Shown piece after piece: positions 1,632 through 63,629 of a DNA stretch of 64,000 bases; the first letter of the stretch is position 1, and each line of letters opens with the position of its first letter. Location: the NCBI GenBank assembly GCA_024679065.1, contig JAGIQG010000009.1, positions 107,384,001-107,448,000 on the forward strand, read 5' to 3'. This DNA is from Sphyrna mokarran (taxonomy: Eukaryota). The notes under the pieces were generated by a model. The model did not search any database and was not told where the DNA came from. It saw only the letters and a list, made by a program, of their open reading frames with translations. The translations under genes and the position numbers were made by a program.

Positions 1632-1739
1632 AGAAAAATAACAGGAATCCTTCCCCGATACTTGGACTGGGAGGTGCTTCAGTTTTGCTGAGTATAACCG
1701 TCATTTTTCTTATATGTGGACTCTGCTGGCAAAACAAAG
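1632..1739 (+). CDS. Gene A transmembrane exon
   Basis: ctttattccag| acceptor and AAAG|gtgtgt donor. Encodes the hydrophobic stretch ILGLGGASVLLSITVIFLICGLCW and ends NK plus a phase-1 G, as in gene B. Confidence 0.85.
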
Positions 1740-4700
1740 GTGTGTGTTCCTGTCAAACCTACTTTAGTAGTATGTTTTCGCTATAGGGGCAGTTGCTCTA
1801 CTGCTATGAGATCTAACCAGGTAAATGCTTCCAACGAACTTGTCACTTTTTTTGTGTGATCGGAAACCCGATTAGTATGAGCAATTATTTTAAAACACGC
1901 CATTTCCTTCAGAATTATACAACTGTTCCAATTTAGAAAGACACCATTAGGCCGTATGCCGGCTTTTCGTAGGAACAACTGATCTACTATCACTCGCTGA
2001 TCTTCCCCCCATTTTCAGCTAATAATCCAAATCAGTCTTGGAAACCTCGAGTAAATCTGATTCACTCACAATCTCAGGCAGTGTATTCCATATCTAACTT
2101 TATCGCGGCGTTTATCGCGAGGGGGATAGAATACAAAAGCAGGGAGATCTTGCTGCAACTATACAAGGCACTAGTGAGGCCGCAATTGGAGTACTGTGTG
2201 CAGTTTTGGCACCTTGTTTGCGTGAGGATATATTGGCCTTGGAAGGAGTACAGAGACGGTCCACCAAGCTGATACCGGAGATGAGGGCGATAGGTTACGA
2301 GGGGAGATTAAATAGACTGGGCCTATACTCGTTGTAGTTTAGAAGGCTGAGGGGGGATCTTATAGAGACTTACAAGATAATGAAAGGGCTAGATAGGGTA
2401 GAGGTAGAGAAAGTCTTTGCGCCTAGAAAGGAAAACAGAACTAGAGGGTACAGATTCAAATAAGCCGGGGGGGGGGGGGGGGGGTGGGGGGGGGAGGCAG
2501 TTTTAGAGCGGAGTGGAAGAGAAACTTCTTCACTCAAAGAGTGGTGAATCTCTGGAATTCTCTGCCCATTGAAGTGGTGGAGGCTGCCTCGTTGAATATA
2601 TTTAAGTCAGGGATAGGTTTATTTCTGATAGACAAAGGAATTAAGGGTTATGGGGAGAAAGCGAAAAAGTGGAACTGATCCACTTCAGATCAGCCATGAT
2701 CTTAATGAATGGCGGGGCAGCCTCGAAGGGCTAGATGGCCTACTCCTCCTCGTATTTCACATATTCTAACCACTCGAGTGGTAAAATATTTTCTTCCTGT
2801 CGCTATTGTCTTTTAGCTACATCACTTAGATTTGCCAATCATTTAAATCTGTGCCCTCTTGTTCTCGATCCTTCCACTAAAGGTACAGTTGTCACTATCT
2901 ACTCCTGCTAGGTCCCTTGAGATTTTGAATAAATGAAAAATCTTACCATAGCTTTCTCGTCTCCAAAGACAACCGTCCACCTTCCTTACTCACTATGAAA
3001 TGCCTAGCCCAATACATGAAGAAGATAATATCATCATAGAAACAGGCAAGACGATGGCCTAGTGGTACAGTCCCTAGATTATTAATCCAGAAACTCAGCC
3101 AATGTTCTGAGAATCCTGGTTCCAATCCCTTCTGGCAAATGTGGAATTCGAATTCAATAAAAGATGTCTGGAATTCAGAATCTACTGAACACCATGAAAC
3201 AATTGTTAGAAAAAGACGTCTGGTTTAATGATAACCTTTAGGGAAGGAAATCTGCCATTGTTGTCTGGTCTGGCCTACACGTAGCTCCAGATGCACAGCA
3301 ATATGGTTGACTCTCAACTGCTCTTTGGTAATTATGGATAAATGCCGGCCGGGCAGTGACACCCGTGACCCATGAATGCAAAAAAAAAGAGGAAGGAGGG
3401 CATTCGGCCTATCGAGTCCACACTAACTCTCAGACAATGTGCCCTACACTGCAACTTCATATGTTTACTACGATAATCACCCTAATCCACGTATTTTGGG
3501 ACACTAAGGGGAAATTCAACATAGTTAAGCATATTTTTGGATTCTGGAAGGAAATAGGAGTACCCGGAGGGAACTCACACAGACACGTGGAGAATATACC
3601 AACTCCACATGGATAGTTATCGAAGGCTGGAATTGAACATGGGTCCCTACCACTGTGAGGCAGCACCATATCCTTGCACTCATTATGCTCCTCGTCCATA
3701 TGTATCGCAATCAGTTTCTCTATGTTAGTGTTTAAGACCAATTTTATGATGTTTTAACAAGAAACTGATTCAAACAGTTATATTAATGTCGATATTATTT
3801 TTCTTTCAGTTATCCTGAGACTGAGAAGGTAAAAAAACTCATCTTATCAAATTGTTGATTATTCAGACCATAATGTGCAGAATTTTAAATTTAAACATCA
3901 TTTTGCTTCTTGCAGACAGTGCTGTGAAATTGATGCGATATCTGGTACGTGAATTGTATGCATTCTGCATTAATTACCTCACAGGTGGAGAAGGTGACAA
4001 AGAAGGCGTATAGTATGTTAGCTTTCATAGAAAAGGGTATAGAATATAAGAGTAGGAGTTTGATGTTGCAGTTGTATACAACTTTGGTTAGGCCTCACTT
4101 GGAATACTGCGCCCAGTTCTGGTCTCCGTACTATCGGAAGGATGTGGAGTCCTTGGAGAGAGTGCAGAGGAGGTTTACCAGGATGCTGCCTGGTATGGAA
4201 GGACTGTCCTATGAGGAACGATTAGATAGACTGGGGTTGTTTTCCCTTGAAAGACGTCGGCTTAGAGGGGATCTCATAGAGGTGTATAAGATTATAAGGG
4301 GTATAGATAGAGTAAATGGAGGTAAACTTTTTCCACCTTTAGAAATGGATAGGACGAGAGGTCATGGCCATAGGGTGAGGGGGGCTATGTATAGGACGAA
4401 TATTAGAGGGCAGTTTTTCACACAAAGGGTAGTGGGGGTGTGGAATGCACTGCCGAGTAAGGTGGTGGGAGCAGGCACGCTGGGGCTGTTTAAGGGTCTC
4501 TTGGACAGCCACATGAGCGGTATGCAGATAGAGGGATATGTTAGGACTGTTTAACTACGGCTTTTTTCCACAGGTAATTCGGTCCATAATTTGAGCACGC
4601 ATTCGGCAGGTGGTGCGGGTACAGCTCTTGGATGTTGATTCATGGGTTGCCTGGTACCTCATGTCGTATATGAGTGCTTTATGTGGACCACCTGAAGGGC

Positions 4701-7700
4701 ACCATGACAGCTCAGAGACTATCGATGTGGCTGTGCAGACACTTGGAATTGGGCCGGTGTCTGCGGGAGTTTGCGCGTTCTCCCCGTGGTTGCGTGGGTT
4801 TTCTCCGGGCACTCCGGTTTCCTCCCACAACCCAAAAATTCGCTCTTAGGCTGATTGGGTAACAAATTGTCCCTATGGTGAAAATTTTCCAAATTAGGAT
4901 TAATATATATATTATTATATAGGAATATTAAAATAGGATAATGTATTTGGTATTACGGTGGCGCGGGCTCGTTGGGCCGAAGGGCCTGTTTCCCGTGCTG
5001 TGTTGCTTAAAAAAAAAATTACTATTCCCGGCAAATTGAAAACAAATCTAAACTAAAAAAGTACATTTACAAATAGTTTCATTCGAATGAATTCAATTTC
5101 TGGTGCTACGCGTGTCTGTTATGTTTGTGGTTCTGACCCTCTCTGAATGCTATTCCCACAGCCGATCTACAGCCAGCGACACAGGTAAGAACGATTGGAT
5201 CACAACATGTTTGGTATGTGCAATTACATAGTTCTGATAACCAATGTCTTTCTGCTAATTTACTATATTTTCTTTCCTGCGATTGATATGCTCTATCCCT
5301 TCTCCGCTTATATTTCCTGAATATGCTTATGAAGTTTTGACTCCACAGGTGTGCGGGTTAGGTGGATTGTCCATGCTAAATTGCCCCTTGGTGTCAGTTG
5401 GATTAGGGTAAATAAATGACGTTATGGGGATATGGCCTGCGTGGTCGGTGCAGGCTCGATGGGCCGAACGGCGTCCTTCTGCAGTGTGTGATTCTATTCT
5501 ATGACTATGTCCAGCAAAATGGGAGAAATGTTTATACTTCCTATTAAAGTAGCGATTTCTTGACGATAGTTGCCAAACTTCTTGAAAACTTAAAATCACT
5601 TTAAAAAAACTTCCAAAGGCAAGGTCTGTATTCAAAAGACATAACTAAAATTGATGCAAACCACAAAAATTATATAAGACAAACAAACATTAACCTAAGG
5701 ACAAGGGAGGCCTTCGGATGGTCGAATAACTCCTATTCAGTGGTACAAGATCTGCAAAGATCTGAGGCACTCAGCCAAAATACAGTATGATTACAGCTTC
5801 TGTTATCTCAAATATATCTATAATTTAGCTAATAATTAGCTTAGATTCAATTTAATTCCGTGTTAACATGTCAGTCCAGTACAAGGCAGGTTACCTCAGC
5901 CAGTTGCAATACACTTCTTAACATAATATTTTATTTGTCCGTTTCATACCGGATATCTTCCCTTTGGCAAAACCCACTTCCTGGTTGCTGTGTTGTTAAA
6001 GTCGCTTCTACTGCTATTCCTTTCCCATAAGTGCATTGCCAAGACAATCAGATAAACAACACTCCGGACACATATATTTTTTCATGTCAGGATAATAGAT
6101 GCATCTACTTGATACATTATATTTCAATAACTGCCCCAGGATTTGAAAATAATAATGTTCATTCTGCTGGCTAATGGATTTCTGGCTGTTTAACGTTTTA
6201 ATCTTATCATTATTTCTTCAGCATTTGCTTTTTTGATTGAAGTGAACAAATACATTTAATGTTAAGATACATTTAATATATTAATGCAGAGTCACTTAAT
6301 ATTCCAATATGGACTTTAAGATCATACTTAATTCCTTTCAATACTGTTATTCCATTCATATAAGATCAAACTTTTAACATTGCCCTGTTAGGATCATAGA
6401 ATTCCTACAGGACTATGTTCTATTTGATCAGCCTGCATCTTGGCCCTATCTCCGTAACCCCACATGTTAACCCTGTTAATCCCCCTGACACTACGGGGCA
6501 ATTTAGCATGGCCGATCAAACCAACCAGCACATCTTTCAGTTTATGGAAGGAAACCAGAGCACCGGAGGAAACTTATACATACACGGGAAGAATATGCAA
6601 ACTCCACAGATAGTGACCCAAACCCGGAATTGAACTCAGGGCACTAGCGCTGCGAGGCAGCAGTGCTAACCACTGTGTCACCCTGCTACCCCTGGTGGAA
6701 TCATTTCAACTCTTCCCCACTACATTGTCACTATAAACTAAAGATCTGCCTATGGATCTGCAAGCTGACCTAAAAGCTCTTTCATAAAGTTAAGCCAGAT
6801 GTAACCACGATCAATAATGATGCTTAGCAGATGTATCGCTCATTAGCTCCAGCTCATCCAGTGAGCTGAAAGGCTCCTCTCTGTTTTGTTTTTAAGGATT
6901 GATATTTTCCCAATAGACATTGACCCACAAAATTCAAACCGCCCCCAAAATGTGCAGGACTATATTAAATTGCTAAGCTCAGTCAGAGTTGCAAGGCCTG
7001 AAATGAAATGAGTAGACTTATCTAAGTAAAGATCTTTCCAGAGTTTTGTGCGTCAGGATGTTGTTCAAGTAGTTCGGACAAAAGCAATGGCCCTCTTTGC
7101 ATTCTACTTGTGGTAACAGACAGAATTTCTGTGTGGTCCAAAAATGGTAGTTAATGGATAATGGTCCTTCAACAATGTGAATTTCTCCTATTCAGGAATT
7201 TATGAAATTTCTTTACTCCAAAAATGCTTCCCTTTCAATCTGGTAAGAGTTACTTTAGTTTTTCTCAAGGTTCAAGAAGCAAAAGCAATGTGTCATTCTT
7301 CACTTGATGCATATTTCTCTTAAATATTGTTAAAAAATAAGGAGATGCATTGCAAACTAATTGCAAGGATCAAAGTGCGTGACAGCTTCAGATTTAAACA
7401 ACTCTCAGTCCACTCAGGAACTGATCCATTGCTTTTCGAAATAATGCAGGAGTTCATCTGTTACCAAACGATTAGAAGGGCTGGAAGAAGTCCTTATGTG
7501 TCAGAATTGTCATAATTTCTGTGGCTTCTTGCTCACATTTATCTGTAGTAAACTTGGCTCAGATCAATTTTGCTGAAACATGGATTATCAGGTTGACTGC
7601 AACTACGCTCAGGGGACTGGGCACCAAAACATTCAGATATTTCGATTGCCGACGCAAAACAGTCAAAGTGCTCAGTATAGAAGCTTCATGGCTCTATACT

Positions 7701-8965: not shown

Positions 8966-10146
8966 ATTGTCGTGGCTAAACTTAGACGCACTGGCAATTA
9001 AATCTATTTCTTTTTATTTTATTGCGATGATTATTAGGTGCACTCTAATTGTGGCATTGATTCCTTGCATAATAACAAAGTGAACACCAAAGAGAAGAAG
9101 ACAAGGAAAATGAACAATAACACAGATCATATCGAATATGCTACCATCAGCTGCAGCTATGGGAAGAAACTTGAAATGCTGCAATATCCAGCTCTTCACA
9201 AACCCTGATTCTCACTGAGTCGTATCTAGCGTACTGATTACCTTATTCTCTATTTCACTATCAATAATTAAGCTTGTTTAACGTTAACTGTGAATGTTTG
9301 TGAACATGCAGCTGTTCCTAAATTCCCAATTGTTTAGTATATCAACCTTGAAATTATTCAACTTGTAGAGACGCTGTGCCTGTTCAAGAATCCAATCCTT
9401 GTTCTCATGATTACATTGTACATTTTACCAGCACCGGGAAACAGAACAAGGAAAGGAAGGAGATCCACTGGGTCACTACTTGAAGAAAATGTATAAATCA
9501 GTCAGTGAAAATATCATTACGTGAATATTCCCGCTAATTTCATGAGAAAGGTTATTTGCTGTCTCCCTTGGTATTTGATTCAAGCAATCTTCCCAATGTA
9601 ATTTCATTATTGACAACCAATAGCAATCTAAGTATTTTCCCAAAATGTAATTATATGAGTACAGTTAACTGCTTTTAAGTACTTAGTCATTTTAACTCTG
9701 TGCTGCAAATCATAGTGTTCCATTAAATCCTGCAAATTTTGTGCTTGATATTTTCTCAGATCTATTGTCTCGAGTCACGCATGTAAGGGGAGTAGGATTC
9801 AGTATGATTTGGAGTAAATAGTTTCCCATACTATATCAAAAGGGAAAAGGGGAAAGTAGTTGATATTATAAACTGTCGAGTGTGTCCGATAGTGAATGTT
9901 TTATGTTTTTATAAAATTTTATGTTTTTATATAATTCTGTAAACCTGTAGTTCTATTGCTTGCACCTGAGTGGCCCTATATTCTTTAATAGTCATTAGTA
10001 TTCAAAATATCAGTCCATCTCAAATCATTTTCAATAAATTATATTTTATGAGAGGCGTTTTGACATACTATAATATGAGCTCCATGAATGGTAGAGTTGA
10101 GCTGAATAACCTACTTCTATTCCTATGGTCTTATGGTCTTACCATA

Positions 10147-28344: not shown

Positions 28345-28405
28345 ATGGCGACAGAACGGTGGGCAATGACCTCTCTATTTCTCTTGATTTCAAGTTGTCT
28401 AGAGG
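28345..28405 (+). CDS. Gene B signal-peptide (leader) exon
   Basis: acaATGG Kozak context, encodes MATERWAMTSLFLLISSCLE, then G|gtgagt, a strong phase-1 donor matching the phase-1 V exon. Confidence 0.8.
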
Positions 28406-31400: not shown

Positions 31401-34400
31401 AAAAATAATCCAGTGAATTAGCACATCCTATATATTCATAGATAGCTGTTCCTTTACTCTTAAGAAAAGGGATGACACCCAATAGGGTTAACGCCTTAGA
31501 TTGTAATATGTAAATCTAGAAAGTAAAAACAATTCAATTATTTATGGACATGGTATGGAAAAAGATGTTTCCTTGATGGAAGCTCAACTCAGCACATATA
31601 TGAAAAAACATTCAATCTTCAACGAAAAATCCAGTTTTTGTTTTCAGGAGAAACAAAAGGCTTCACTTCAATATGTGAGCAGCTATTCAAAAAGGTTCAC
31701 AAACGAACATATTTTCTTGCATTAATCAATTTCTTGATGGTTGCTTGACACAGGAACTATGTTCGGCCAGGTCTCTGAATGTACTTGGGCAAAAGTTTTG
31801 TTTCCCTGAATTCATGATGTGGTCAGTTTTCAATGATTAGTTGTGCACTGTAGTACTCTATGACTGTTCACATTCAATACTATGGGCCACGTTTGTCCAA
31901 TGGGGTTAGGTGGACACGTCAGAGCCTTTCATTCGGCGGTGCCGACTCGATGGGCCTTTTCTGTGATTCTTCGAGTTTATTGTTCCATTAACGCAAGGTG
32001 TTAATAGCAAATGCTAGTATAGAATCATAGAATCCTACAATGTAGAAGGAGGCCATTCGGCCTATCGAGTCAGCAGAGGCCACAGTATGCATTTACCCTA
32101 GATAATCCCCCTGACACTAAGGGACAATTTAGTATGACCAATCCACCGACCATGCACATTTTTGGACTCTGGGAGGAAATCAGAGCATCCGGAGGAAACC
32201 CACGCAGGCACGGAGAGAATGTGCAAACTCCTCGTAAACAGTGACCCAAGCAGGGAATCAAGCCCATTTTCCTGGTATTATGAGGCAGCAGTGCTACCAC
32301 TGTGTCACTATGCCACCCATTTCGAATCATATTCTGGCTCTAAGTAATAACGAAACATATTTATTATAATACCCTGTTTCTGAAATCAGATATTTTAGAT
32401 AACTGTCTGAGGATAAGTGCATTAAATTGATTTATTATTTTGTAATATCAATTCAACAATACAAAACTAAAATGGTGCTTTTGATTTTCTCTTCATTGTT
32501 TTTTATTTGTACCTGTTATTCCCTCTTTCCTTTACCAATACTTTCTCTCTTGAATTTTTTAATCATATATATCATAACTTATTTCCAAACTAATGATAAA
32601 CTGTTGAAGTAATGCAGAAGGAAATCTGAGATTGCATGGTTTGCAATTCAAGACTTCCCAAAGTTTTAGGTTTTATTTATTAGTTTATTTACTCCTGTCA
32701 CAAGTAGGCTCACATTAACACTGCAATGATGAGAATCACCTAGTCGCCACACCCAGGGCCAGTTCGAGTACACTGAGGAAGAATTTAGCACCTGCAGTGC
32801 AAATAACCAGCACATCTTTTGGACTATGGGAGGAAAAGAACTTCATGGCTAACGAATGCCGAATGAACCATAATCTTTTTTGCTCAATAGGCCAATGTGC
32901 CAAAGGTTCTGTTCATATCGAGGTTCTTAATTAGGACGAGATCAATTCTTTGCAAGAGTTTTTTTCTATTGAGCATCAAAGTTTCTCTACTGCATCTCGA
33001 GGAGAAAAACATTCCCTTATTTACTGCATCAATATTTTCTTAGAATGATATACGCTTACGACTTGCAATTATTTGTCACAGGCGAAGATGCCACAACTAA
33101 ACAAAACGGTATTGGCTCAACATGCGTGATACACTGTTCTTCGTTAATTACTCCTTGTCTTTCTTTGTAAACCCCTAGGTACGGAGACCGCCACTTCCCC
33201 CGTAGTGCAAAGCCCCGGTTCAGTTCATATATTCCAAGGTGGAAGCGTGATTTTGAATTGCAGTTTTCGGTTAGATGGACTGGGAACTTACAGCTGGAGG
33301 AGAGATGACAGCCCCATAGACTTTGAGTCTCCGAAGTACAAGAACAGAATTGTCAAAGCGGACCAGCATGCTTTCAATTCGAGGAAGGATGCATCCATTC
33401 TCATTAAGAATATGACAGAATGCGAGTCCGGGATATATTACTGTGAGATTGAAATCTTGGGGAGACCAAAACAATCAGGCAATGGAACCTCGGTGACCGT
33501 ACAGCGTAAGGAAATGTAACCAGAAAGCTTTGCAATGCTGTTCGCACAGTTAAAATTCTCCCCCATTCTTTCCACCATACTGTTGCTACTCTGTTTTTGT
33601 GAAACTCGTTTTTGGTTTCAGAATGGTTAAAAGGTTTAGTTCTTTCATTGCGCCCAAGTGTGGTTCTACTTCATTCTTTCCCCATGCCCATATTCTTTCT
33701 ATGCCTCTGTTTCCTCTCCACCTACCTGTCTTTCTATCCATTTCGAGCTTTATGTCCCTTTGTGTCGTTGCTCTCTTCGCTATTGTTCTTTCGGAACGAA
33801 TTTATGAAGTAGCAACTTATGTGTTATTTCTTTCAACAGATGTTTGCGACAAACCAGTCGCTGTAAATAACTTGCTGCTTGACTGGATATGGATCGCAGT
33901 GGCAGGGGGCGTCACCTTGCTTATTATCCTGGTACTGCTGATAGTGATAATATTCCTTGCTCGACGAAACAAAGGTAATTGAAGTTTTGAAAATAGTAGC
34001 CATAATTTGGCATTTATTACTATCATGCTTCATTCTAGCAAAATATCGTTACAATGAGACATTTTTATAGCAAACGTCAAGTGAATAATCAATACATTTT
34101 ACAGTAAACAAGGGCATGCATGTACCTGAAGCTTTTCATACTTGAAGTATATGGTTCCTTCTGGTCTGCGAATTATAATAAAGTATGGTGCTTAGTCACT
34201 ACAGAAAGCACAAGAAATAAACTTTACTCGATCTATGGGTATAGAAACATTCATTACATTTCTTGCATGCTGTGCCCAAAGATAGATCCTTGCCTCACTG
34301 TCTGCTGATGCTTCATCATGAAACATTTCCTTGTCAGTTCGATGTCTATCAGTGAACTTTGCTATTGTCTTCCACTCTCAGGGCTAGGATGAAGAGACAA

Positions 34401-37174
34401 TTCCCAAGACTATCTCAGTTGAGAGTGAACAGAATCCGCGTTGTTGGTGTTATAAAAACATAGAAAATGGGAGCAAGATAAGGCAAATTGGCTCTTCGAG
34501 CCTGCTCTGTCATTTATCACTACCATGGCCGATCGTCCAAGTCAATAGCCCAATCCTGCTTTCTCCCCATAACATGTGATCCTATTCGCTCCAAATGCTA
34601 TGTCTAGTTGCCTCTTGAATATATTCTATATTTTGTCATCAACTACTTTCTGTGGTATTGAATTCCACAGGTTCACCACTCATTGGATGAAGACACGTCT
34701 CCATACCTCCGTCCTAAATTGCGTACTCTGTATCCCCAGATTGGGACCGCTGGTTTTGGACACAACCAACATCGGAAATATCCTCCCTGCATCGACCCTG
34801 TCTGGTCCTGTTAGAATTTTATCAGTCTCTCTGAGGTTTTTCCCTCATTTGTCTGAATTCCAGCGAAAACAATCCTAACCGAGTCAATATCTCCTCATAC
34901 ATCAATCTCCCCATCACTGGAATTAGTCTAGTAAACTTTCGCAATACTTCCTCGAGAGCAAGAGCATCTTTTCTTAGAAAAGGAGACCAAATTTGCACAT
35001 AATATTTTTAGTGTGGCCACGCCAAGTCCCCGTATAATTGCAACAACACATCCCCTCTGCTGTATTTGAAACCTTCCGCCACATGCTATTTGCCTTCTTT
35101 ATCACCTGCTGCACCTGCATGCTTACATTCAGCGACTGATGCACAAGGCTCATACTGAAGCACACTATTTAGCTTCCGAAGCTAAAGACTCCGCCTGAGA
35201 ACTTATACTAGTTAGGAAAGATTAAGGGGGCCGGCATGTGTTTCCAATAGAAAAGGAAGATTCGCAGCCACCCCAATTTTCAAAATTATGAGGGACGGTC
35301 GCATGATAGTAACACCACTAGACTACTAATCAGAGGCCCAGATTAAAGCTTTCGTTCCAATTCCCCACGTGGCTGATGGTAGAAATTAAATTATATCAAT
35401 AAATCTGCAATATAAAGCTAGTCTCAGTACTGTTGACCACTAAATTATCACCGATTTTTCATAAAAGCCCTTTGGTTCATTCATGTCTCTGGAGATGTAA
35501 GTTTGCCGTCGATAAATGTCTCCAAAGCAACATGGTTGATCCTCAACTCTTATCGAAGATGGCCGAGCAGGCATCTCAATTTAAGGCCAATTTGGGGGTG
35601 GGTAACAAAAGTCAGCGACGTTCACGTTACATGAAAGGATTAAGAAGCAAACAGGAGTGTGCAAGTGTTTAACAAGTACAAATTTAGAGACTTAGCATAG
35701 GCTATTTATGAGGCAGACCAGAACTACAGTCCATCAACATAACCTACCCATTCATAAATTCAGTCGTGAATTCGTGTTAACTCGCTTTAGCTGGAAAGCG
35801 GTTAGAATATGAAACTTGGCCAAAAACTTAGTTAAGACCACTAGTGCAGAGACATTTGAAAGGATACTAGAGAAACACTTGAGAAACAAAAACAAGTGTA
35901 AGAACCCGTTGATGGGGTTACATGAAGAAGTGTTTGAAGAGTTTCAAAAAGAACTGCATGAAGCAGTGGAGTCGAATGGTCTGTTCATGTGCTGTAACTA
36001 GCTTCTAATTTTCAAATTAGTGTGGTTTGGAAAAGTATTATTTCAAAGGATAGCACGAAGGGCATTTATTACTCATTCGTAATAACCATCTTCAGAGGCC
36101 AATTAAGAGCCCACCATATTGGGTCTGGAGTCACGTATAAGACAGGTCGGTTTAAGATGGCAGATTTTCTTCAGGAAAATGTATTAATAAACCAAAGGGG
36201 GATTCCTTTTGCACAAGTCGATTACTGTTTTTATGGTTCCCTAAACTAAGGCTAGCTTTTAACTCCAGACTTAGTAATTCATTTTATTATTCACCAGCCA
36301 CTGAGACACCATGGTGAATTTCATTTTCCCCTGAACATTAGCTTGAATCTGTCGATCGCTCGTCTAGGCTATTGCCACCACGTCCTGAATCAGCATTTAT
36401 TTTTCATAAAACGTGAATTGCAGGGCAATAGGTCAATACATCTCAATACTCTAATGTGTTGCCAAGAACTTAGTAACAGGGAAAAATTAAAGGAAGTGAC
36501 ATTAAGAAGTAGGCAAAAATAGGTTAGGAACAGCAGATATTGAATGTGAGTAACTTCACAATGTTAATTCCCCATTCTTGCTACTATAGCACATTTATAG
36601 TAAGTCCATCTGAGCAGAGTTACACGATTTCGATTTTTTTGAGATTGCATTGTGGTCATTGTTTTGGATATCGATTGTCAATATTAATAACAGAATTAAT
36701 CACAATTATATTTAATTATTTTCTTATTTACAGCTTACGCTTTACTTGTCAGGTAAGACAATCAATATTGCGTTGCCAATTTGTAATGCCATAATGACTT
36801 CTTGCAAATGTTTGCACACGACGAAAAATTACAACACATCTGCTAAATATCTTTTTGCTCTACAGAGAATGTTCTTCTTTTGATTGTGCAAAAGAACCAG
36901 GTAAGTGATCGCCATCTTTATTTGAGCAAGATGTTAGCAGTTGCTCATATTAATATAACAAATCTGCAGGCTGTACGTTTGTACCTGCATGTGTGTATAT
37001 GTGTGTAAGTCTGTGTATGCATGCAAGTAAATGTGAGTTTGTGTATGAATGCGTGTATGTGCGGGCGAGTGTGTTCATATGTGTATGTTTGTTTATGTGT
37101 CTGTGCATGTTGTGTATGTTTCTGTTCGTGTGTGAGGGCGTGTATGTGTCTCTGTTTTTGTGTGTGTGTGCGTA

Positions 37175-37213
<39 letters not shown>

Positions 37214-40200: not shown

Positions 40201-43200
40201 TCTTTACGTCTGTTTATGGTCGTCTTGTGTTGATAATCAATTAGTCCAGGAGCGATTTTACGGCCTCGCTCGGGCGAGACGGACATTTTCATTGTGGGGC
40301 CTTCGCCCACGCGGATTTCATGGCGGGCGAGGTAATACAGTCCTGAGTGTTTTGTAGAATGATAAGGATTTGTCCCTTCGTAGCCTCCATTGTACTAATA
40401 GCAATTCAAGCGTTTGATCAGTGTATTTTCCATAAGCACATGCTCACTTTATGAATTGGTTTCTCTGTATACTGATATAAATAGTTTTTAATAAAATAGC
40501 TACATTTTGTCTTTCCGTTTAAAGTTGAAATTAACCAAACGAATTTCTGATCAACTCAACAAATTTTGATCATTGTGGTTGGCCACTACAGCGGATCAGC
40601 CAAAAAAATCTAGAGTTTCACCAGCAGCTGAGGGGCAAGGTCAGCCAAATTGCGTTCCAACACATTGAACAGTGAAGCATCTTAAATATTAACTAGCTAC
40701 AACACACAAACAAAAAGCCAACAAAGTCGTACACATACTAAATCTGAGTCTCACTTGTCTTCATATCCAAGGCCAGAGTATCTTACAACTTCAAAAGTAC
40801 TTAATTGATTTTAAAATCTCTTTGGAGATCCAGAGGTTTGCAAAACTTTTCTTTCTTCTTTAAAGTTTACTTTAGACGCTGAGCAGGCATATCTCTAAAC
40901 ATGAGTGCACATAGAACTTCAACAGGCAAAATAGTTCGCAAGTGCAACATTACTGAAAAGCTACTTGCTGGAACACATGCGAATGTGCGACTCGACATTG
41001 AAAATATTTATTTGTCCAAAACATCAGACAAATTTAGGTTTGATTTTGATTTGATTTGATTTATTAATGTCCCATGTATTGCGATGAAGTAAAAGAAATG
41101 TTTCTTGCGCACTATGCAGACAAAGCATGCCATTCATAGAGAAGGAAACAGGTGTTACAGTCATAACTAGGTTGTAGAGAAAGATCAGCTTAATGCAAGT
41201 TAGGTCCATTCATAAGTCTGAGGGCAGCAGGGAAGGTGTCCTTCAGTCGGTTAGTAAGTGACCTCAGACTTTCGCATCTTTTTCCCGATGGAAGAAGGCG
41301 AGAGAGAGAATGTCTGGGGTGCATACTATCCTTAATTATGCTGGCTCCTTGGCGAGGCAGTGGGAAGTATAGACAGAGTCAATGGATTGGAAGCTTGTTT
41401 GTGTGATGTAATGAGCTACATCTATGGTGAGATGAATTGTCTTTAAAATATGGATTAATCATGTTCTCCCTTTGCCTGAAACAGAAGTGCCTCGGAGAAA
41501 GAAAGTGCGGGAAGTGCGAGATCGTGCTAAACATCAGGTAAATGTGTGTCTGACTATTTTTTAAGTTTATTTATTAGTCACAAGTAAGGCTGTGAACTTA
41601 CTGTGAAATTCTCCTAGTCGTCTCACTCTGATGCCTGTTCTAACCAGCACATCTTTCAGAGGAAACCCAAGCCCTCAAAGGAAACCCACGAGACATGGGG
41701 AGTACGTGCAAACAGAAAGTGATCCAAACTGGGAATTGAACCTGGGTCCTGGCGCTGTGAGGCAGTAATGCTAACCACAGTACTCTATCCACTCCAAAAT
41801 ATGACGAGGTCCGATCACACCTGAAATATATATCTTCACAGGCACATTTTTGTGTATTGGGATTACATAGAACACAGAACATAGAGTTATACAGCACAGT
41901 ACAGGTCCTTCGCCCTCAATGTTGTTCCCAGCTATGTCCAACCCAAGATCAAGCTATCCCTCTCTCTATCATTCTGGTGTGCTCCATGTGCCTATCCAAT
42001 AACCGCTTGAAAGTTCCTAAACTGTCCCACTCCACTACCACAGCAGGCAGTGTATTCCACAGCCTAACCACTCTCTGAGTGAAGAATCTACCTCGTACAT
42101 CCCCACTCTATCTCCCACCATGAACCTTATAGTTATGCCACCTAGCAACCGCTACATCCACGTGAAGAAATAGTCTCTGAACATCCATTCAAATAGCACG
42201 AGGAATCACGGGCTTAGGGTGGGGGGGGGGGGGTAAAGTATAATTTGGATGCTAGAGAGAGTTTATTCCACATAGAGGGTGGTGGGGGTATGGAACGCGC
42301 TGCCAAGTAAAGTGGTGGAGGCAGGCACTCTGGAGTTATTTAAAAGATACTTAGATGGGCACATGAATAGAATGGGAATGGAGGGATATAGAAAACTGAT
42401 TTAAAATAGGGATCATGAGCCTTGGGAGTCTCTGGGGAGTGTGTAAACGAGTCCCTAGGAAGTGTGTAAATAGTCGATGATATTGATGTATTTGTTTTAT
42501 CCTACAGGTACTTTCGTCCGCCTTGTTGTCTAACAACAGGCATACACGCGATGGGTCGTGAGAGGGCTGCTCTTGGATTTTTTTCGAGAGTATCCTCGTG
42601 CTTCACGTCGTCAGTGTACGCTTGACCTGGACCATTTGATGGGCAACACGACAGCTCAGTGACTATCGCTGTGCTGTGCAGATTTGGGCCTGTATCTGTG
42701 GGAATTTGTGCATCCTTCCCGTGCTTGAGTGGATTTTCTCCGGGTGCTCCGGTTTCCTCCCACATCCCAGAGATGTGCTCTTAAGCTGATTGGCAGAACA
42801 AATTCTCCGTAAATTGCCTCAAATTTGGTTTCAATGCATAGATCTATAACCATAGACAGAGATCACGGGTAAAAGTGGGAATATCGAGGTGGCGGCTTGG
42901 GCTCGTGGGGCCGAAGGGCTTGTTTCCCGTGCTGTTTTGTTCTTTGTTCTTTGTTATTCTATCTATCCGCCTCATCATCTTATAAACCTCTATTCAGTCG
43001 CCTCTCATCCTCGTCCGCTCTAAAGGGAAAAGCTCCAGCTCCCTCAACCTTTCCTCATAAGACCGACCCTCCAAACCAGGCAGCATCCCGAGAAATCTCC
43101 TCTGCACTCTCTCTAATGCTTCCACATCCTTCTCATAGTAAGGTGATCATAACTGAACACAATATTCCAAATGTGGTCTCACCAACGTTCGGTATACTTG

Positions 43201-44933: not shown

Positions 44934-44974
44934 CTGCGGTCTGCATCCCTGTTTTATTAACAGCAAGGACTTGG

Positions 44975-46498
44975 AAGTTTTAAAGAAAACAAGAGAGGAG
45001 ATTGCAGAGCCTCTGGCTCTGATCTTCAGGTCCTCGTTGGTTACGGGTGTGGTTCCGGAGGACTGGAGGATAGCGAATGTAGTCCCATTGTTTAAGAAGG
45101 GGAAGAGAGACCTTCCTGGGAATTATAGGCCAGTGAGTCTTACTTCTGTTGTGGGCAAGGTATTGGAGAGAATTATTAGGGATAGGATTTATAGTTATTT
45201 AGAGAGAAATGAATTGATTGGGGATAGTCAGCATGGTTTCGTGAAGGGTAGGTCATGCCTTACTAACCTCATTGAGTTTTTTGAGAAAGTGACCAAAGAG
45301 GTGGATGGGGGTAAGGCGGTTGATGTAGTATATATGGACTTTAGTAAGGCGTTTGATAAGGTGGCCCATGGAAGACTTCTACAGAAAATGCAGATGTGTG
45401 GAATAGAGGGTGATTTAGCTAATTGGATTAGAAATTGGCTGGCAGATAGAAGACAGAGGGTGGTGGTTGATGGGAGATATTCATCGTGGATTTCGGTGAC
45501 GAGTGGTGTGCCTCAGGGGTCTGTTTTGGGGCCCCTGCTGTTTGTAATTTTTATAAATGATCTGGATGAGGGTATTGAGGGATGGATCAGTAAATTTGCA
45601 GATGATACTAAAGTTGGTGGTGTGGTAGATAGTGAAGAGGGGTGTTTTAGTTTACAGAGTGACTTGGACAAGTTGCAGAGCTGGGCCGAGAGGTGGCAAA
45701 TGGAGTTTAATGTGGAAAAGTGTGAGGTAATGCACTTTGGCAGGAACAATAAATGTGTAGAGTATAGGGCTAATGGTAGGGCTCTTAATAGTGTTGAGGA
45801 ACAGAAGGATCTTGGTGTATGTGTCAATAGATCCCTGAAAGTAGGCAGTCAAGTGGATAAAGTTGTTAAGAAGGCATATGGAGTCTTAGCTTTTATTGGT
45901 AGGGGGATTGAATTTAGGAGCCGCAGCATCATGTTGCAACTGTACAAAACTCTAGTGCGGCCGCACTTGGAGTATTGTGTGCAGTTCTGGTCCCCACATT
46001 ATAAGAAAGATGTGGAGGCATTGGAGAGGGTACAGAGGAGGTTTACCAGGATGTTGCCTGGTATGGAGGGCAGGTCCTATGAAGAGAGGTTGAAGGATTT
46101 GAGGTTGTTTTCGTTAGAAAGGAGGCGGCTAAGAGGGGATCTTATTGAAGCATATAAGATGATTAGAGGTTTAGATAGGGTGGACAGTGATAGCCTTTTT
46201 CCTAGGATGGAGAAAGCTAGCACGAGGGGACACAGCTTTAAATTAAGGGGTATGAGTTATAGGACGGATATCAGAGGTAGGTTCTTTACTCAAAGAGTGA
46301 TTAGGGAGTGGAATGCCCTGCCTGCAGCTGTTGTAGATGCGCCAAGTTTGGTGGCGTTTAAGAGGTTAATTGATAAGTATATGGAAGAGAAGGGAATGGT
46401 TTAGTTTGGAGGGGCATTGCTTTTTATTTTGGTCGGCACAACATCGAAGGCCGAAGGGCCTGTTCTGTGCTGTATTGTTCTATGTTCTATGTTCTATG
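44975..46498 (+). mobile_element. Young 5'-truncated CR1 LINE with uninterrupted reverse-transcriptase ORF (about 477 aa)
   Basis: NYRPVSLTSVVGK, YMDFSKAFDKV, GVPQGSVLGPLLF and KFADDTK motifs; (GTTCTAT)n tail; no endonuclease domain. Confidence 0.97.
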
Positions 46499-47299
46499 AA
46501 TGTGCCATCGAAAATCTTTCATTTTTCACTCAAGCTACGCAAGATAAAATAATAATAAAGGGAACAGTAATTTATACTCATTAGAAGAGTGTGCTTATTG
46601 GTTGGCAGATGTACGCTGGTTACCAACAAGTGATGCATAAAATTAAACGCATTAAAATGCATTTCTTTTAACCAAAGTAATGCTTGTGTCCTTTCTCCAA
46701 AAACAGGATGATAGTTACCTTAACTGTCACCATAATGAAGCCAACGCGAAGCAAAACCGGCCGGCGTTGCCAAGGCGGAACATACAGTAGATCTTCTCAT
46801 TATTTGATTATTGTCGTGTCTGTATTTCACCATCCGGCCTTATCAAAATAACAGTGAGATAAGAAAAACTACTTTCAACTTTTCAGTTTTTTGTGACAGT
46901 TAGTTGTTTATTAATGCACAATGTACGCTGTATGAAATTTCAAATATATGATTTTGTTTCTTTTTCAAATAGAATTTCTTTGAAGTTGCTGTTCCCATGG
47001 CAACTTATATACTATTATTATTCATTATTATTAATATAAGAGTTACAAAATGAATTATGGTATGTTGCTGTATCTGATTAGTGTAAAATTTATTGCCCAT
47101 CCGCTATTTGCCCTCAAGAAAGTGATGATGAGCTGCCTTCTTGAACTCTTATAGTCCCTGAGCTGTTGGGACACACAGAGTGCTGGGAAGGAGGGAGTTC
47201 CATGATTGTCACTCAGTCATCAAAGCGGGAATTGAACTTAGGTCCCTCGAGCTGTGAGGCACTTTGCTAACCATTGTGCCATCGATGTTCACTTCTTTC

Positions 47300-56238: not shown

Positions 56239-56244
56239 TGTATT

Positions 56245-57365
56245 TTCTACAGAAAATGCAGATGTGTGGAATAGAGGGTGATTTAGCTAATTGGATTAGG
56301 AATTGGCTGGCAGATAGAAGACAGAGGGTGGGGGTTGATGGGAGATATTCATCGTGGAGTTCGGTGACGAGTGGTGTGCCTCAGGGGTCTGTTTTGGGCC
56401 CCTGCTGTTTGTAATTTTTATAAATGATCTGGATGAGGGTATTGAGGGATGGATCAGTAAATTTGCAGATGATACTAAAGTTGGTGGTGTGGTAGATAGT
56501 GAAGAGGGGTGTTTTAGTTTACAGAGTGACTTGGACAAGTTGCAGAGCTGGGACGAGAGGTGGCAAATGGAGTTTAATGTGGAAAAGTGTGAGGTAATGC
56601 ACTTTGGCAGGAACAATAACTGTGTAGAGTATAGGGCTAATGGTAGGGCTCTTAATAGTGTTGAGGAACAGAAGGATCTTGGTGTATGTGTCAATAGATC
56701 CCTGAAAGTAGGCAGTCAAGTGGATAAAGTTGTTACGAAGGCATATGGAGTCTTAGCTTTTATTGGTAGGGGGATTGAATTTAGGAGCCGCAGCATCATG
56801 TTGCAACTGTACAAAACTCTAGTGCGGCCGCACTTGGAGTATTGTGTGCAGTTCTGGTCGCCACATTATAAGAAAGATGTGGAGGCATTGGAGAGGGTAC
56901 AGAGGAGGTTTACCAGGATGTTGCCTGGTATGGAGGGCAGGTCCTATGAAGAGAGGTTGAAGGATTTGAGGTTGTTTTCGTTAGAAAGGAGGCGGCTAAG
57001 AGGGGATCTTATTGAAGCATATAAGATGATTAGAGGTTTAGATAGGGTGGACAGTGATAGCCTTTTTCCTAGGATGGAGAAAGCTAGCACGAGGGGACAC
57101 AGCTTTAAATTAAGGGGTATGAGTTATAGGACGGATATCAGAGGTAGGTTCTTTACTCAAAGAGTGATTAGGGAGTGGAATGCCCTGCCTGCAGCTGTTG
57201 TAGATGCGCCAAGTTTGGTGGCGTTTAAGAGGTTATTTGATAAGTATATGGAAGAGAAGGGAATGGTTTAGTTTGGAGGGGCATTGCTTTTTATTTTGGT
57301 CGGCACAACATCGAAGGCCGAAGGGCCTTTTCTGCGCTGTAATGTTCTATGTTCTATGTTCTATG
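56245..57365 (+). mobile_element. Young CR1 LINE, near-identical to 45377-46498
   Basis: Same sequence with a few substitutions and one 1-nt deletion near 56395; same tail. Confidence 0.97.
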
Positions 57366-60477: not shown

Positions 60478-60560
60478 GAGAAGTTTCACAACAAAATCCA
60501 ACAGGTTTATTTGGTACCATGACCTTTCAGAGTGTTGATCCTTCATCAGGTGAGTGGCTA
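60478..60560 (-). mobile_element. Penelope pseudo-LTR fragment with a degenerate hammerhead core, inserted in a SINE
   Basis: Minus strand reads cacCTGATGAaggatcaacactctGAAAgg...ccaaataaacctgttgga. A related inverted pair lies at 55100-55200. Confidence 0.6.
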
Positions 60561-62896: not shown

Positions 62897-62902
62897 TTTA
62901 TT
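62897..62902 (-). terminator. Candidate polyadenylation signal of gene C
   Basis: AATAAA on the minus strand about 490 nt after the stop, beyond an AT-rich 3' UTR. Confidence 0.45.
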
Positions 62903-63386
62903 TAGATAAAAGACTTCGTTTAATGGAAAATAGCTAAGCCAACATCACCAACCCTAAACGGAACACGGACATACTCAACTACCTTCTTATCCGCAACAAC
63001 AACATGTCTGGAGGAAATCTATTCCTCAATATCTCCAGGGCAAGGTACAATAATTAGAGGATTCGTTCATTGGAAAGTGATTACGATGACAGATGCCAAA
63101 TAGTGAAGACTGTACAAAAAAAGCAACTCATCACGATTCATTACTGGTCGCGATGATTAAAATCAAAATAAAGAGTGAAAGAATAAAAATAAATCACGTG
63201 TTTATGAACTTTTGAGAATAAAATAACAGCAATATGTTGCAAAAATGCGACTCTTTGATTTACAGGAAGGGAGTACTGCACCTTGCATTTTGTACCAAAG
63301 ATCATGTTCATCGAAATCTCAACCCTGAACTCACTATTGATGTACCATTTTTCAGTCCTTTCTTTGCCGATTCCATGCCTGAGGCA

Positions 63387-63629
63387 TCATTGGCGTGCCG
63401 GGGCCCGAACCACCCCGTACACTACCGGTTCTTCCATCTGGTTTCGAGGTCTCACTGGCGCCTGATTCTTGTTCTTATCACGACTTTGCCTCACTACCGC
63501 GTACACAACCTCGTCTTCTCGTTGAGGCGGGGGTTCCACCTCATGATTGTTCGTGCGATTCCTCGGTCGCTGTGTTTTGGGTTTGGCGATGCGCAGGTCA
63601 GCATAAATAACATTGTTCGACGTGTCTCC
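63387..63629 (-). CDS. Gene C terminal exon: inhibitory-receptor cytoplasmic tail with three ITIMs (remainder of gene probably mostly beyond the window)
   Basis: Long polypyrimidine tract then tttgag|GGA GAC (the rarer GAG acceptor). Encodes GDTSNNVIYADLRIAK...EDEVVYAVVRQ...EEPVVYGVVRAPARQ*. VIYADL, VVYAVV and VVYGVV fit V/I/L/SxYxxL/V. Confidence 0.85.
   Translation of the reverse strand, partial: GDTSNNVIYADLRIAKPKTQRPRNRTNNHEVEPPPQREDEVVYAVVRQSRDKNKNQAPVRPRNQMEEPVVYGVVRAPARQ

What the first reader, a model, noticed from the sequence alone, without database searches (positions are those of the whole stretch)
1632..63629. Cluster of NKp30-like immune receptor genes with divergent signalling tails, hidden among repeats
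Seen: two same-strand genes (A, B) with identical post-TM exon phases, and a convergent gene (C) ending in three ITIMs. Known: clustered Ig-V receptor families with contrasting tails (KIR/LILR, CD300/TREM, teleost NITR, Xenopus XMIV) act as paired immune receptors, and mammalian NCR3 is single-copy in MHC class III. Inference: this is part of an expanded cartilaginous-fish NKp30-related family that includes inhibitory and non-ITAM-coupled members, possibly MHC-linked. The ectodomains of A and C are not visible in the window, so their family membership is not proven.
Basis: partly seen in the sequence, partly recalled or inferred. Interest (0 to 1): 0.85.

Follow-up and report, generated by a model that had tools for sequence, protein, structure and literature searches.

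The report
Shark NKp30-like receptor genes, three tails
This shark DNA carries one complete, expressed NKp30-like immune receptor gene, the back half of a second, and the tail exon of a possible third, each with a different signalling tail; the gene family is already described in sharks.

Summary
Gene B (+ strand, 28345-46790) is a complete 7-exon gene. Its single V(J) exon best matches human NKp30 by sequence and by predicted fold. A mismatch-free contig of run X1 joins its V exon to its TM exon at GT..AG.

Gene A (+, 1632-9208) is the stalk/TM-to-stop part of the orthologue of Mustelus LOC144497821 and of a deposited nurse shark NCR3. These proteins carry NKp30-like V domains, so A belongs to the family by orthology. 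Its V exon lies off-window.

After the TM exon, A and B share the exon phase series 1, 2, 1, 0, including a 19-nt microexon.

Gene C (-, 63387-63629) is one terminal exon with three ITIM-like motifs. Its ectodomain is unseen and its family is unproven.

There is no charged-TM member and only one V exon in the window, so a paired activating/inhibitory system is not shown here. MHC linkage cannot be tested in this window.

An expanded shark NCR3 family is in print (Kinlein 2021; title seen, content recalled). This scan's unchecked notes flag more NKp30-like clusters on the same genome piece.

What may be new is that B is conserved across sharks and rays, with a 22-residue membrane-proximal stretch 91% identical between them.

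The parts
1632..1739 (+). Gene A stalk/TM exon (phase 1 to 1), coding KNNRNPSPILGLGGASVLLSITVIFLICGLCWQNK. The TM has no charged residue.
   Evidence: AG/GT sites. 89% identical over 37 aa to Mustelus asterias P0176, E 2.6e-16. 53% over 38 aa to nurse shark NCR3 P0110, E 2.5e-6.
3810..3828 (+). Gene A 19-nt microexon (phase 1 to 2), coding VILRLR(R).
   Evidence: Found by a scan for AG+19 nt+GT. The peptide equals VILRLRR of P0176 as printed. Strong polypyrimidine acceptor.
3916..3944 (+). Gene A 29-nt exon (phase 2 to 1), coding QCCEIDAIS.
   Evidence: It matches QHGEIDAIPAS of P0176, two codons shorter.
5162..5184 (+). Gene A 23-nt exon (phase 1 to 0), coding (A)DLQPATQ.
   Evidence: It lies within the P0176 tblastn hit at 5143-5229. 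ADLQPATQ is identical in P0176.
9038..9208 (+). Gene A last coding exon (phase 0, stop at 9206-9208). It holds an ITIM-like IEYATI and a second, non-conserved LQYPAL.
   Evidence: 74% identical over 38 aa to P0176, E 2.3e-10. 47.5% to nurse shark NCR3 P0110, E 5.5e-4. Motifs.
28345..28405 (+). Gene B leader exon (ATG at 28345, ends in phase 1).
   Evidence: tblastn with orthologues: Cetorhinus P0171 72% over 25 aa. Donor G|GTGAGT.
33179..33505 (+). Gene B V(J) exon (phase 1 to 1), NKp30-like, with GNGTSVTV as the J-like G strand.
   Evidence: Pfam V-set 4.6e-11. Best PDB sequence hit NKp30 2.8e-8. Foldseek ranks 1-4 are NKp30. X1 contig covers 33178-33505 with 0 mismatches.
33840..33974 (+). 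Gene B stalk/TM exon (phase 1 to 1). Asp sits at the outer TM edge (LLLDWIW), no basic residue lies in the TM, and RRNK follows it.
   Evidence: Joint 33505->33840 (GT..AG) in contigs of X1 and X2. Orthologue alignment.
36734..36752 (+). Gene B 19-nt microexon (phase 1 to 2), coding AYALLV(R).
   Evidence: Sequence and splice sites. AYALLVR is present in the orthologues. Depth bins at 36610-36990 of X1, X2 and X7 fit 21+35 laid bases.
36866..36900 (+). Gene B 35-nt exon (phase 2 to 1), coding (R)ECSSFDCAKEP.
   Evidence: 80-87% identical to orthologues over 14-15 aa in most (71-79% in three). Phases. Depth bins.
41485..41537 (+). Gene B 53-nt exon (phase 1 to 0), coding EVPRRKKVREVRDRAKHQ.
   Evidence: tblastn hit of P0171 at 41478-41561.
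46707..46790 (+). Gene B last coding exon, DDSYLNCHHNEANAKQNRPALPRRNIQ followed by the stop codon (46788-46790).
   Evidence: tblastn with orthologue tails, E down to 6e-5. Coordinates.
63387..63629 (-). Gene C terminal coding exon (phase-0 acceptor, stop at 63387-63389), with three ITIM-like motifs and a 26-nt direct repeat 84 nt apart.
   Evidence: Weak non-random similarity to B-type tails. No homologue found. No expression data.
44971..46404 (+). LINE reverse-transcriptase ORF (477 aa) in the last intron of gene B. It is one of many LINE fragments that separate the exons.
   Evidence: Pfam RVT_1 8.9e-38. 25 tblastn segments across the window, with a 97.6% identical copy at 56384-57268.

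Best explanation
The window lies inside a shark NCR3 (NKp30-like) multigene region. It holds parts of three type I membrane receptor genes.

Gene B is complete and transcribed. It encodes a leader, one germline-joined V(J) domain of NKp30 type, a stalk/TM segment with an acidic residue at its outer edge and no basic residue, and a roughly 65-residue tail without ITIM or ITAM. The first 22 tail residues (RRNKAYALLVRECSSFD[S/C]AKEP) are almost invariant from sharks to rays. B looks like a one-per-species orthologue across elasmobranchs.

Gene A is the stalk/TM-to-stop part of a different lineage, the orthologue of a nurse shark NCR3. Its tail ends in a conserved [V/I/T/A/D]EYATI tyrosine motif of ITIM/ITSM type.

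Gene C, convergent to B, contributes only a last exon with three ITIM-like motifs.

Inferred mechanism, not shown here: the V domains bind cell-surface ligands of B7 type. A, and C if it is real, would damp signalling by recruiting SH2 phosphatases to the phosphorylated ITIMs. B would signal or traffic through its conserved membrane-proximal segment and an unknown partner.
For: Gene B:
- Pfam V-set 4.6e-11.
- NKp30 is the best solved-structure hit for the exon (3pv6_B 2.8e-8, against SIRPa 4.9e-5). It is also the best full-domain hit for the 10-row orthologue profile (6yjp_A 3.3e-10, against TCRa 7.2e-9).
- The AlphaFold model has pLDDT 94.6. Foldseek ranks 1-4 are all NKp30 chains, with TM 0.78-0.80.
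- The X1 contig of 798 nt has 0 mismatches and joins 33505->33840 at GT..AG. X2 shows the same joint. The unique intron bins have zero depth.
- 16 proteins with E<=1e-5 among 459 candidates, from 13 named species, one locus each.
- In the tree the window's V sits in the shark B clade (99/97), with the rays beside it.
- Shark-versus-ray identity is 0.91 in the juxtamembrane stretch and 0.45 in the V domain.

Gene A:
- All five exons map onto Mustelus P0176. The TM exon is 89% identical (E 2.6e-16) and the last exon 74% (E 2.3e-10).
- P0110 is named 'Natural cytotoxicity triggering receptor 3', Ginglymostoma cirratum. It hits NKp30 best in the PDB (7e-10).
- A Pristiophorus gene model (P0001) fuses an A-like gene to the B orthologue. 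This suggests that the A-B order is conserved.

Shared architecture: phases 1, 2, 1, 0 and a 19-nt microexon in both genes.

Gene C:
- Phase-0 acceptor with a long pyrimidine tract, and three ITIM matches.
- Profile of B-type tails against the C tail: 9.3 bits, reached by 1 of 2000 shuffles. Smith-Waterman: 0 of 500 shuffles reached the score for 5 of 9 orthologue tails.
Against: - The margins over other V families are small. NKp30 scores 43.0 bits against 38.7 for TCR alpha in the profile search.
- The tree contains only hits of the V exon, so it has no outgroup and cannot test NKp30 membership.
- Neither A nor B has the basic TM residue of mammalian NKp30.
- The runs laid are contigs whose RNA label is the tool's guess.
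- A's V exon and all of C upstream of its last exon were never seen.
- For C, 4 of 9 pairwise comparisons were reached by shuffles 1 to 143 times of 500. Triple-ITIM stretches arise by chance in 28 of 100 simulated windows. No homologue was found, though the length limits of that tool make the blank uninformative.
- No expression data exist for A or C.
- Every functional statement is inference from motif knowledge.
Confidence: 0.8

Rival explanations
1. Gene C's exon is not part of an NKp30-like gene. It would be either the tail of an unrelated ITIM receptor (another IgSF or a lectin-type receptor) or a chance ORF that is not expressed.
For: - 28 of 100 simulated windows hold a stop-free stretch with three or more ITIM-consensus matches, and the real window has a second, low-complexity one.
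- No homologue was found with the exon as query.
- blastp of the tail against the 195 proteins held, with default composition correction, gave nothing below E 0.2. An earlier run against 173 proteins without that correction gave E 0.036 at best, to B-orthologue tails.
- No V or TM exon for C lies in the window.
Against: - The exon has a strong acceptor in phase 0, as do the last exons of A and B.
- It aligns colinearly with B-type tails beyond what composition explains (1 of 2000 shuffles).
- It has a 26-nt direct repeat at a 28-codon period over two of the ITIM units.
- It lies tail-to-tail with B in a region where unchecked scan notes report further ITIM-bearing NKp30-like genes on both sides.
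Confidence: 0.3
2. Gene B is a generic single-V receptor of another family (SIRP-like, CD28H-like or an antigen-receptor-like V), and its NKp30 likeness is superficial.
For: - SIRP alpha and TCR alpha follow NKp30 closely in every search.
- NCBI's automatic names for orthologues disagree: 'myelin protein zero-like protein 1' for Carcharodon, and 'uncharacterized' for 13 of 16.
- B lacks the TM arginine of mammalian NKp30.
Against: - NKp30 ranks first in three different tests: single sequence, profile (among full-domain hits) and fold.
- The match is as strong as that of a deposited nurse shark NCR3 (41.8 bits).
- The CDR3-to-G-strand stretch C-E-I-E-I-L-G...GNGT aligns with human C-R-V-E-V-L-G...GNGT.
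- The E-I-P / PPP loop motifs given for the CD28H group (passages in PMC11599192) are absent.
- SIRPs have added C1 domains, while B has one V exon between the leader and the TM exon.
- 12 of 30 looked-up hits of the V exon carry NCR3 names.
Confidence: 0.1
3. A, B and C form a paired activating/inhibitory receptor system that shares one ligand-binding domain, as KIR or LILR genes do.
For: The tails contrast within about 62 kb. Unchecked scan notes describe such pairs in neighbouring windows.
Against: - No TM in the window has a basic residue.
- A-lineage V domains are only 30-35% identical to B's V and form separate starred clades.
- B is a slowly evolving one-per-species orthologue, unlike fast-evolving paired receptors.
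Confidence: 0.1

Closest known systems
Shark NCR3 family (nurse shark NCR3 genes, GenBank MT914154-914161; Kinlein et al. 2021, Immunogenetics 73:333)
   Same: Gene A matches a deposited nurse shark NCR3 protein (P0110) in its TM and tail exons. A belongs to the same starred clade through its Mustelus orthologue. B's V domain hits NKp30 as strongly as P0110 does. A second nurse shark NCR3 (P0118) is also among the V-exon hits.
   Different: I could not read the paper, so I cannot say which of its subtypes correspond to A, B or C. From recall only, it reports eight divergent subtypes and MHC linkage. B's elasmobranch-wide orthology and its invariant juxtamembrane stretch may or may not be described there.
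Mammalian NKp30 / NCR3
   Same: One V-type domain with a germline J-like G strand in a single exon, followed by a stalk/TM exon. NKp30 is the best sequence and fold match.
   Different: - Mammalian NKp30 is single-copy and pairs with CD3 zeta through a TM arginine (recalled; the title of Memmer et al. 2016 was seen).
- A and B have no basic TM residue.
- B has Asp/Glu at the TM edge (His in one ray).
- A has an ITIM-like tail.
- The tails here are split over four small exons, including a 19-nt microexon.
Xenopus NCR3/XMIV-type multigene NKp30-like genes, and NCR3-like genes of bichir, sturgeon and lungfish
   Same: They appear among the hits of B's V exon, named NCR3 or NCR3-like (P0105, P0020, P0059, P0149, P0135, P0148, P0083). 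There are several copies per genome.
   Different: They fall in other clades than the A and B lineages. No B-type tail was seen outside elasmobranchs, but the only search that could have found one was the single-exon search.
KIR/LILR, CD300/TREM and teleost NITR paired receptor clusters
   Same: Clustered IgSF receptor genes whose tails differ in tyrosine motifs.
   Different: In the window there are no near-identical ectodomains and no charged-TM activating partner. B is conserved rather than rapidly diversifying.

Membership tests
NKp30/NCR3 (vertebrate) | A single extracellular V-set domain with a germline-joined J-like G strand (GxGT..V), encoded in one exon | tested here: met
   For B: exon 33179-33505 (phase 1-1) holds the whole V domain, including GNGTSVTV. 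Pfam V-set 4.6e-11. For A and C the V exons are off-window.
NKp30/NCR3 (vertebrate) | NKp30 is the nearest solved structure by sequence and by fold | tested here: met
   For B:
- phmmer: 3pv6_B 2.8e-8 is the top hit.
- Profile: NKp30 is the best full-domain hit, 3.3e-10.
- Foldseek: ranks 1-4 are NKp30, E 1.6e-11 to 2.0e-10.
The margins over SIRPa and TCRa are small.
NKp30/NCR3 (vertebrate) | A basic (Arg) residue at or in the TM for pairing with CD3 zeta / FcR gamma, and a short tail without motifs (mammalian feature, recalled) | tested here: not met
   B's TM has Asp at its outer edge and no Lys or Arg inside. A's TM has no charged residue, and its tail has an ITIM-like motif.
NKp30/NCR3 (vertebrate) | Location in the MHC (class III) region | not testable with these tools
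   No MHC marker lies in the window (one search found only the A and B exons). Leads only:
- Passages call NCR3/NKp30 MHC-linked in sharks (PMC12227049; PMC10751288).
- Unchecked scan notes report AIF1 122 kb upstream and MHC genes on the same piece.
- A Polypterus relative is fused with PRRC2A in a gene model.
NKp30/NCR3 (vertebrate) | Binds B7-H6 | not testable with these tools
   This needs a binding experiment.
Shark NCR3 family (Kinlein 2021 deposits) | Clear homology to a deposited nurse shark NCR3 protein | tested here: met
   A against P0110: TM exon 53% over 38 aa (E 2.5e-6), last exon 47.5% over 40 aa (E 5.5e-4). The Mustelus orthologue P0176 is 58% identical to P0110 over its full length. 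B against P0110: 34% identical over 138 aligned positions spanning the V domain, in a separate clade.
Paired activating/inhibitory receptor cluster (KIR/LILR type) | Near-identical ectodomains on ITIM tails and on charged-TM, adaptor-coupled forms | tested here: not met
   One V exon in the window. A-lineage V domains are 30-35% identical to B's. No basic TM residue.
CD28H / CD28 family | E-I-P(-P-P) or PPP motif in the CDR3 loop, and a YxNx tail motif (as given in PMC11599192 passages) | tested here: not met
   B's loop reads YYCEIEILGRPKQSGNGT, without EIP or PPP. A YLNC (YxNx-like) is present in this species, but the orthologues read YLHC, LLHC or YSHC.

The most novel reading that the evidence does not exclude
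Gene B represents an ancient NKp30-like receptor lineage, with one copy per species in sharks and rays. Its function would lie in a signalling or trafficking module not seen in other NKp30 receptors. That module has an acidic residue at the outer TM edge in most orthologues. It also has a 22-residue membrane-proximal segment (RRNKAYALLVRECSSFDSAKEP) kept 91% identical over the shark-ray split, while the V domain drifted to 45%. If so, B works through an unknown conserved partner rather than through ITIM, ITAM or a basic-TM adaptor. It could be the slow-evolving functional core beside which the fast-evolving ITIM-bearing paralogues (A, perhaps C) expanded.
Probability: 0.3. Interest if true: 0.55.

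Novelty: new member of a known kind. Interest (0 to 1): 0.35.

Why it matters
NKp30 is said to be the one natural-killer receptor traceable across jawed vertebrates. Its non-rearranging VJ domain is also used in arguments about where antigen receptors came from (passages in PMC12227049 and PMC10751288).

This window gives exact, partly transcript-backed exon maps for two lineages of the shark family. It shows that they share a tail architecture of four small exons with a 19-nt microexon.

It also singles out one lineage (B) that is conserved across elasmobranchs and has a near-invariant membrane-proximal segment of unknown function. That segment is a concrete handle for experiments.

The general claim, an expanded NKp30-like family in sharks, is already in the literature. 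Part of it (linkage to the MHC, divergent subtypes) I give from recall. So the finding mainly confirms and annotates.

Tried and rejected
Dead ends:
- The search with C's exon alone was blank. The tool's length limits make that blank uninformative.
- The C tail against this scan's notes by sequence was blank.
- The ESM Atlas search on the B-type tail (P0170 residues 168-235) gave no feature hit and only meaningless short-helix structure rows.
- The Rfam gathering scan of the window gave 0 matches.
- Kinlein 2021, Flajnik 2012 and Ohta & Flajnik 2015 are not held. Their content is cited from recall or from titles only.
- Six literature searches found no open paper that describes the tails of shark NCR3 genes.

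Ideas considered and dropped:
- I considered that a LINE insertion had split an ancestral 58-nt exon of gene A, because intron sequence before 5162 translates to ...NAIPT, like Mustelus ...AIPAS. I dropped this because B has the same two exons with the same phases, so the intron is ancestral.
- I considered the Tyr of B's microexon (AYALLV) as a YxxL signalling motif. It sits where paralogues have Ile or Cys (VILRLRR, AILRLKR, ACIALQR), so it may simply be a hydrophobic position.
- A's IEYATI...LQYPAL could be read as a long-spaced ITAM-like pair. The second tyrosine is absent in Mustelus and S. canicula.

Supplementary files of papers were not opened. Those of PMC11599192 and PMC10751288 may list shark genes that bear on B's identity.


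Full report
WHAT IS IN THE WINDOW

The window has 64,000 bases, no N, 41% G+C and CpG observed/expected 0.55.

Much of it is LINE debris:
- A 477-aa ORF at 44971-46404 is a reverse transcriptase (Pfam RVT_1 8.9e-38).
- That ORF gives 25 tblastn segments spread over the window.
- 9,721 of 64,000 bases lie in intra-window repeats, and none of the 13 exons below overlaps them.

tblastn with the V exon, and with the 173 proteins held at that point, finds exactly one Ig V exon in the window, at 33179-33505.

GENE B (+ strand, 28345-46790)

I placed seven exons from the sequence and from orthologues found in the databases:
- leader 28345-28405
- V(J) exon 33179-33505
- stalk/TM exon 33840-33974
- 19-nt microexon 36734-36752
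- 35-nt exon 36866-36900
- 53-nt exon 41485-41537
- last exon 46707-46790

All have AG/GT sites, and the phases are 0>1>1>1>2>1>0.

Searches were made exon by exon or with database orthologues.

Expression:
- The look-up of sequencing runs listed 16 runs. X1 held 0.56 of the sampled words of 33179-33974, where exons make up 0.58 of the bases.
- I laid four runs on 33100-36990. One X1 contig of 798 nt covers 33178-33505 and 33840-33972 with 0 mismatches and skips 334 bases with GT..AG ends.
- X2, another organism, differs at 16 letters on each of the two laid pieces and shows the same joint.
- X6 shows the same joint shifted by two substituted letters.
- X7 has separate contigs for the V and TM exons.
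- The unique intron bins 33620-33749, 34010-34399 and 35570-36609 have zero depth in all four runs.
- In X1, X2 and X7 the depth in the three bins from 36610 to 36990 equals 8, 17 and 31 bases of the same contig. This fits the microexon (19 nt plus 2 ambiguous bases) and the 35-nt exon. The rows themselves were not printed, so this part is inferred.
- The runs are contigs whose RNA label is the tool's guess. An intron-less contig together with empty introns is what a transcript gives.

IS B NKp30-LIKE?

- Pfam: V-set 4.6e-11.
- phmmer against PDB sequences: the four best hits are NKp30 chains (2.8e-8 to 4.7e-8). The first full-domain hit of another single-V receptor, SIRP alpha, scores 4.9e-5.
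- The alignment pairs C-E-I-E-I-L-G...GNGT with human C-R-V-E-V-L-G...GNGT.
- A profile of nine orthologues plus the exon again has NKp30 as the best full-domain match (3.3e-10, 43.0 bits). TCR alpha (7.2e-9) and SIRP alpha (2.7e-8) follow. Multi-Ig proteins score higher only by summing weak domains.
- A deposited nurse shark NCR3 (P0110) gives 7e-10 and 41.8 bits to NKp30. B is therefore as NKp30-like as a published shark NCR3.
- AlphaFold2 on the exon with 29 aligned sequences gives pLDDT 94.6. Foldseek ranks 1-4 are NKp30 chains (E 1.6e-11 to 2.0e-10, TM 0.78-0.80, rmsd 2.2-2.6). SIRP alpha follows at 1.0e-9 with rmsd 3.8.
- The whole-library search with the exon found 380 proteins at E<=0.001. 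Of 30 that I chose to look up, 12 carry NCR3 or NCR3-like names, from nurse shark, Chiloscyllium, Heterodontus, Pristis, Polypterus, Erpetoichthys, Acipenser, Protopterus and Xenopus. Two are named pIgR-like, two turtle-/SIRP-beta-2-like, one securin (a fusion), and the rest are unnamed.
- These names are automatic, and the margins over other V families are a few bits.

B IS A CONSERVED ORTHOLOGUE

With Pristis LOC127586044 (P0004) as query, 16 proteins scored E<=1e-5 among 459 candidates. They come from 13 named species of sharks and rays plus one unnamed transcript, with one locus per species among the hits.

The window's V exon is 77% identical to Cetorhinus, 75% to Carcharodon and 72-73% to Chiloscyllium and Rhincodon.

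In a 56-row maximum-likelihood tree of V domains:
- The window falls in an 8-row shark clade (99/97).
- The six ray rows are its sister (85/55).
- A 3-row clade (Leucoraja, Pristis, S. torazame) joins them (99/97).

The tree holds only hits of the exon, so it has no outgroup.

Region by region, shark-versus-ray identity is as follows (20 pairs):

| Region | Identity |
|---|---|
| V domain | 0.45 |
| Stalk | 0.19 |
| TM | 0.62 |
| 22 residues RRNK...AKEP | 0.91 |
| Distal tail | 0.47 |

The window's own version differs from the consensus of that stretch at one residue.

The residue before the W-x-W at the outer TM edge is Asp or Glu in 8 of the 9 full-length orthologues aligned and His in Pristis. 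The window itself has Asp there.

The tail has no ITIM or ITAM match.

GENE A (+ strand, 1632-9208)

The exon at 1632 is 89% identical over 37 aa to Mustelus asterias LOC144497821 (P0176, E 2.6e-16). The last exon is 74% identical (E 2.3e-10).

Three small exons between them code:
- VILRLR(R), identical to Mustelus
- QCCEIDAIS, against QHGEIDAIPAS in Mustelus
- (A)DLQPATQ, identical to Mustelus

The same exons match nurse shark 'Natural cytotoxicity triggering receptor 3' (P0110) at 53% and 47.5%.

P0176, P0110 and three further orthologues form a 100/99 clade of NKp30-like V domains.

So A belongs to the family by orthology, although no V exon lies in 1-1631.

The tail ends in IEYATI. The position two residues before the Tyr varies among orthologues (V, I, T, A, D), so the motif is ITIM/ITSM-like rather than strict.

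A Pristiophorus gene model (P0001) fuses an A-like V-TM-ITIM gene to the B orthologue. This suggests that the A-B order is old.

SHARED ARCHITECTURE

In both genes the TM exon ends ...NK|G in phase 1. It is followed by a 19-nt microexon (1>2), a 29- or 35-nt exon (2>1), a 23- or 53-nt exon (1>0) and a phase-0 last exon.

The microexon peptide recurs in other family members: AILRLKR, AIRRLKG and ACIALQR.

GENE C (- strand, 63387-63629)

This is an 80-codon last exon with a phase-0 acceptor behind a long pyrimidine tract and three ITIM-consensus matches.

A 26-nt direct repeat (77% identical) 84 nt apart covers two of the motif units. Short two-copy repeats are often chance.

Motif count alone is weak evidence. 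28 of 100 simulated windows have such a stretch.

The tail aligns colinearly with B-type tails:
- A profile of nine tails scores 9.3 bits, reached by 1 of 2000 shuffles.
- Pairwise, 0 of 500 shuffles reached the score for 5 tails. The other four were reached 1, 2, 14 and 143 times.

No homologue was found (length-limited), and there are no expression data.

C's upstream exons lie beyond the window. Its family is plausible from its position but unproven.

WHAT IS NOT SHOWN

- No basic TM residue and no second V exon are present, so a KIR-like activating/inhibitory pairing is not supported within this window.
- MHC linkage cannot be tested here.
[quoted passage not shown] Passages in PMC10751288 place NKp30 among the VJ genes of the MHC.
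- Unchecked notes of this scan report AIF1 122 kb upstream, MHC genes 16-21 Mb away on the same piece, and further NKp30-like clusters from 10.6 Mb before to 250 kb beyond the window. These are leads, not evidence.

COMPARISON WITH WHAT IS KNOWN, AND VERDICT

Kinlein et al. [quoted passage not shown] From recall, it reports eight divergent nurse shark subtypes linked to the MHC.

This locus is a new, well-mapped member of a known kind.

The part that may be new is the conservation pattern of the B lineage and the shared microexon architecture. I could not check either against that paper.

The species is a shark. Among annotated genomes its A gene is nearest to Mustelus, which suggests a carcharhiniform (inference).

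Noticed in passing
window 44971-46404 and 56244-57271: Two LINE copies whose ORFs are 97.6% identical at protein level over 295 aa. One has an uninterrupted 477-aa RT ORF and sits in the last intron of gene B. This suggests recent activity of this LINE family.
   Followed up: partly
window 3810-3828 and 36734-36752: A 19-nt microexon directly after the TM exon is shared by the A and B lineages. Its peptide pattern ([AV]-[IYC]-x-x-L-x-R) recurs in other elasmobranch NCR3-like proteins (P0061, P0088, P0122). It looks like a family hallmark that mammalian NCR3 lacks (the mammalian point is recalled).
   Followed up: partly
protein P0001 (Pristiophorus japonicus): A database gene model fuses an A-like receptor (V, TM, ITIM tail) with the B orthologue. 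It is probably a mis-join of two neighbouring genes, which would mean the A-B order is conserved in a sawshark.
   Followed up: no
protein cluster of P0017 (Polypterus senegalus): A two-V NKp30-like bichir protein shares its 90% cluster with a model named 'PRC2A protein, partial'. PRRC2A is an MHC class III gene in humans (recalled), so this hints at class III linkage of the family in bichir.
   Followed up: no
window 5143-5161: Intron sequence just before the 23-nt exon of gene A translates in frame to ...NAIPT, resembling the end of the preceding exon in Mustelus (...AIPAS). This is probably chance or a remnant of an alternative acceptor.
   Followed up: partly
window 36993-37427, 21807-22278, 19517-19891: Long CA/TG-rich microsatellite tracts give spurious Cys/Val-rich ORFs. 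One of them (near 19730, minus strand) produces a chance triple ITIM-consensus match.
   Followed up: yes
window 34400-35440: Intron 3 of gene B holds repeat segments that are very deeply covered in contigs of all four runs laid (summed depths in the hundreds). These are transcribed or abundant SINE/LINE families shared by several shark species.
   Followed up: no
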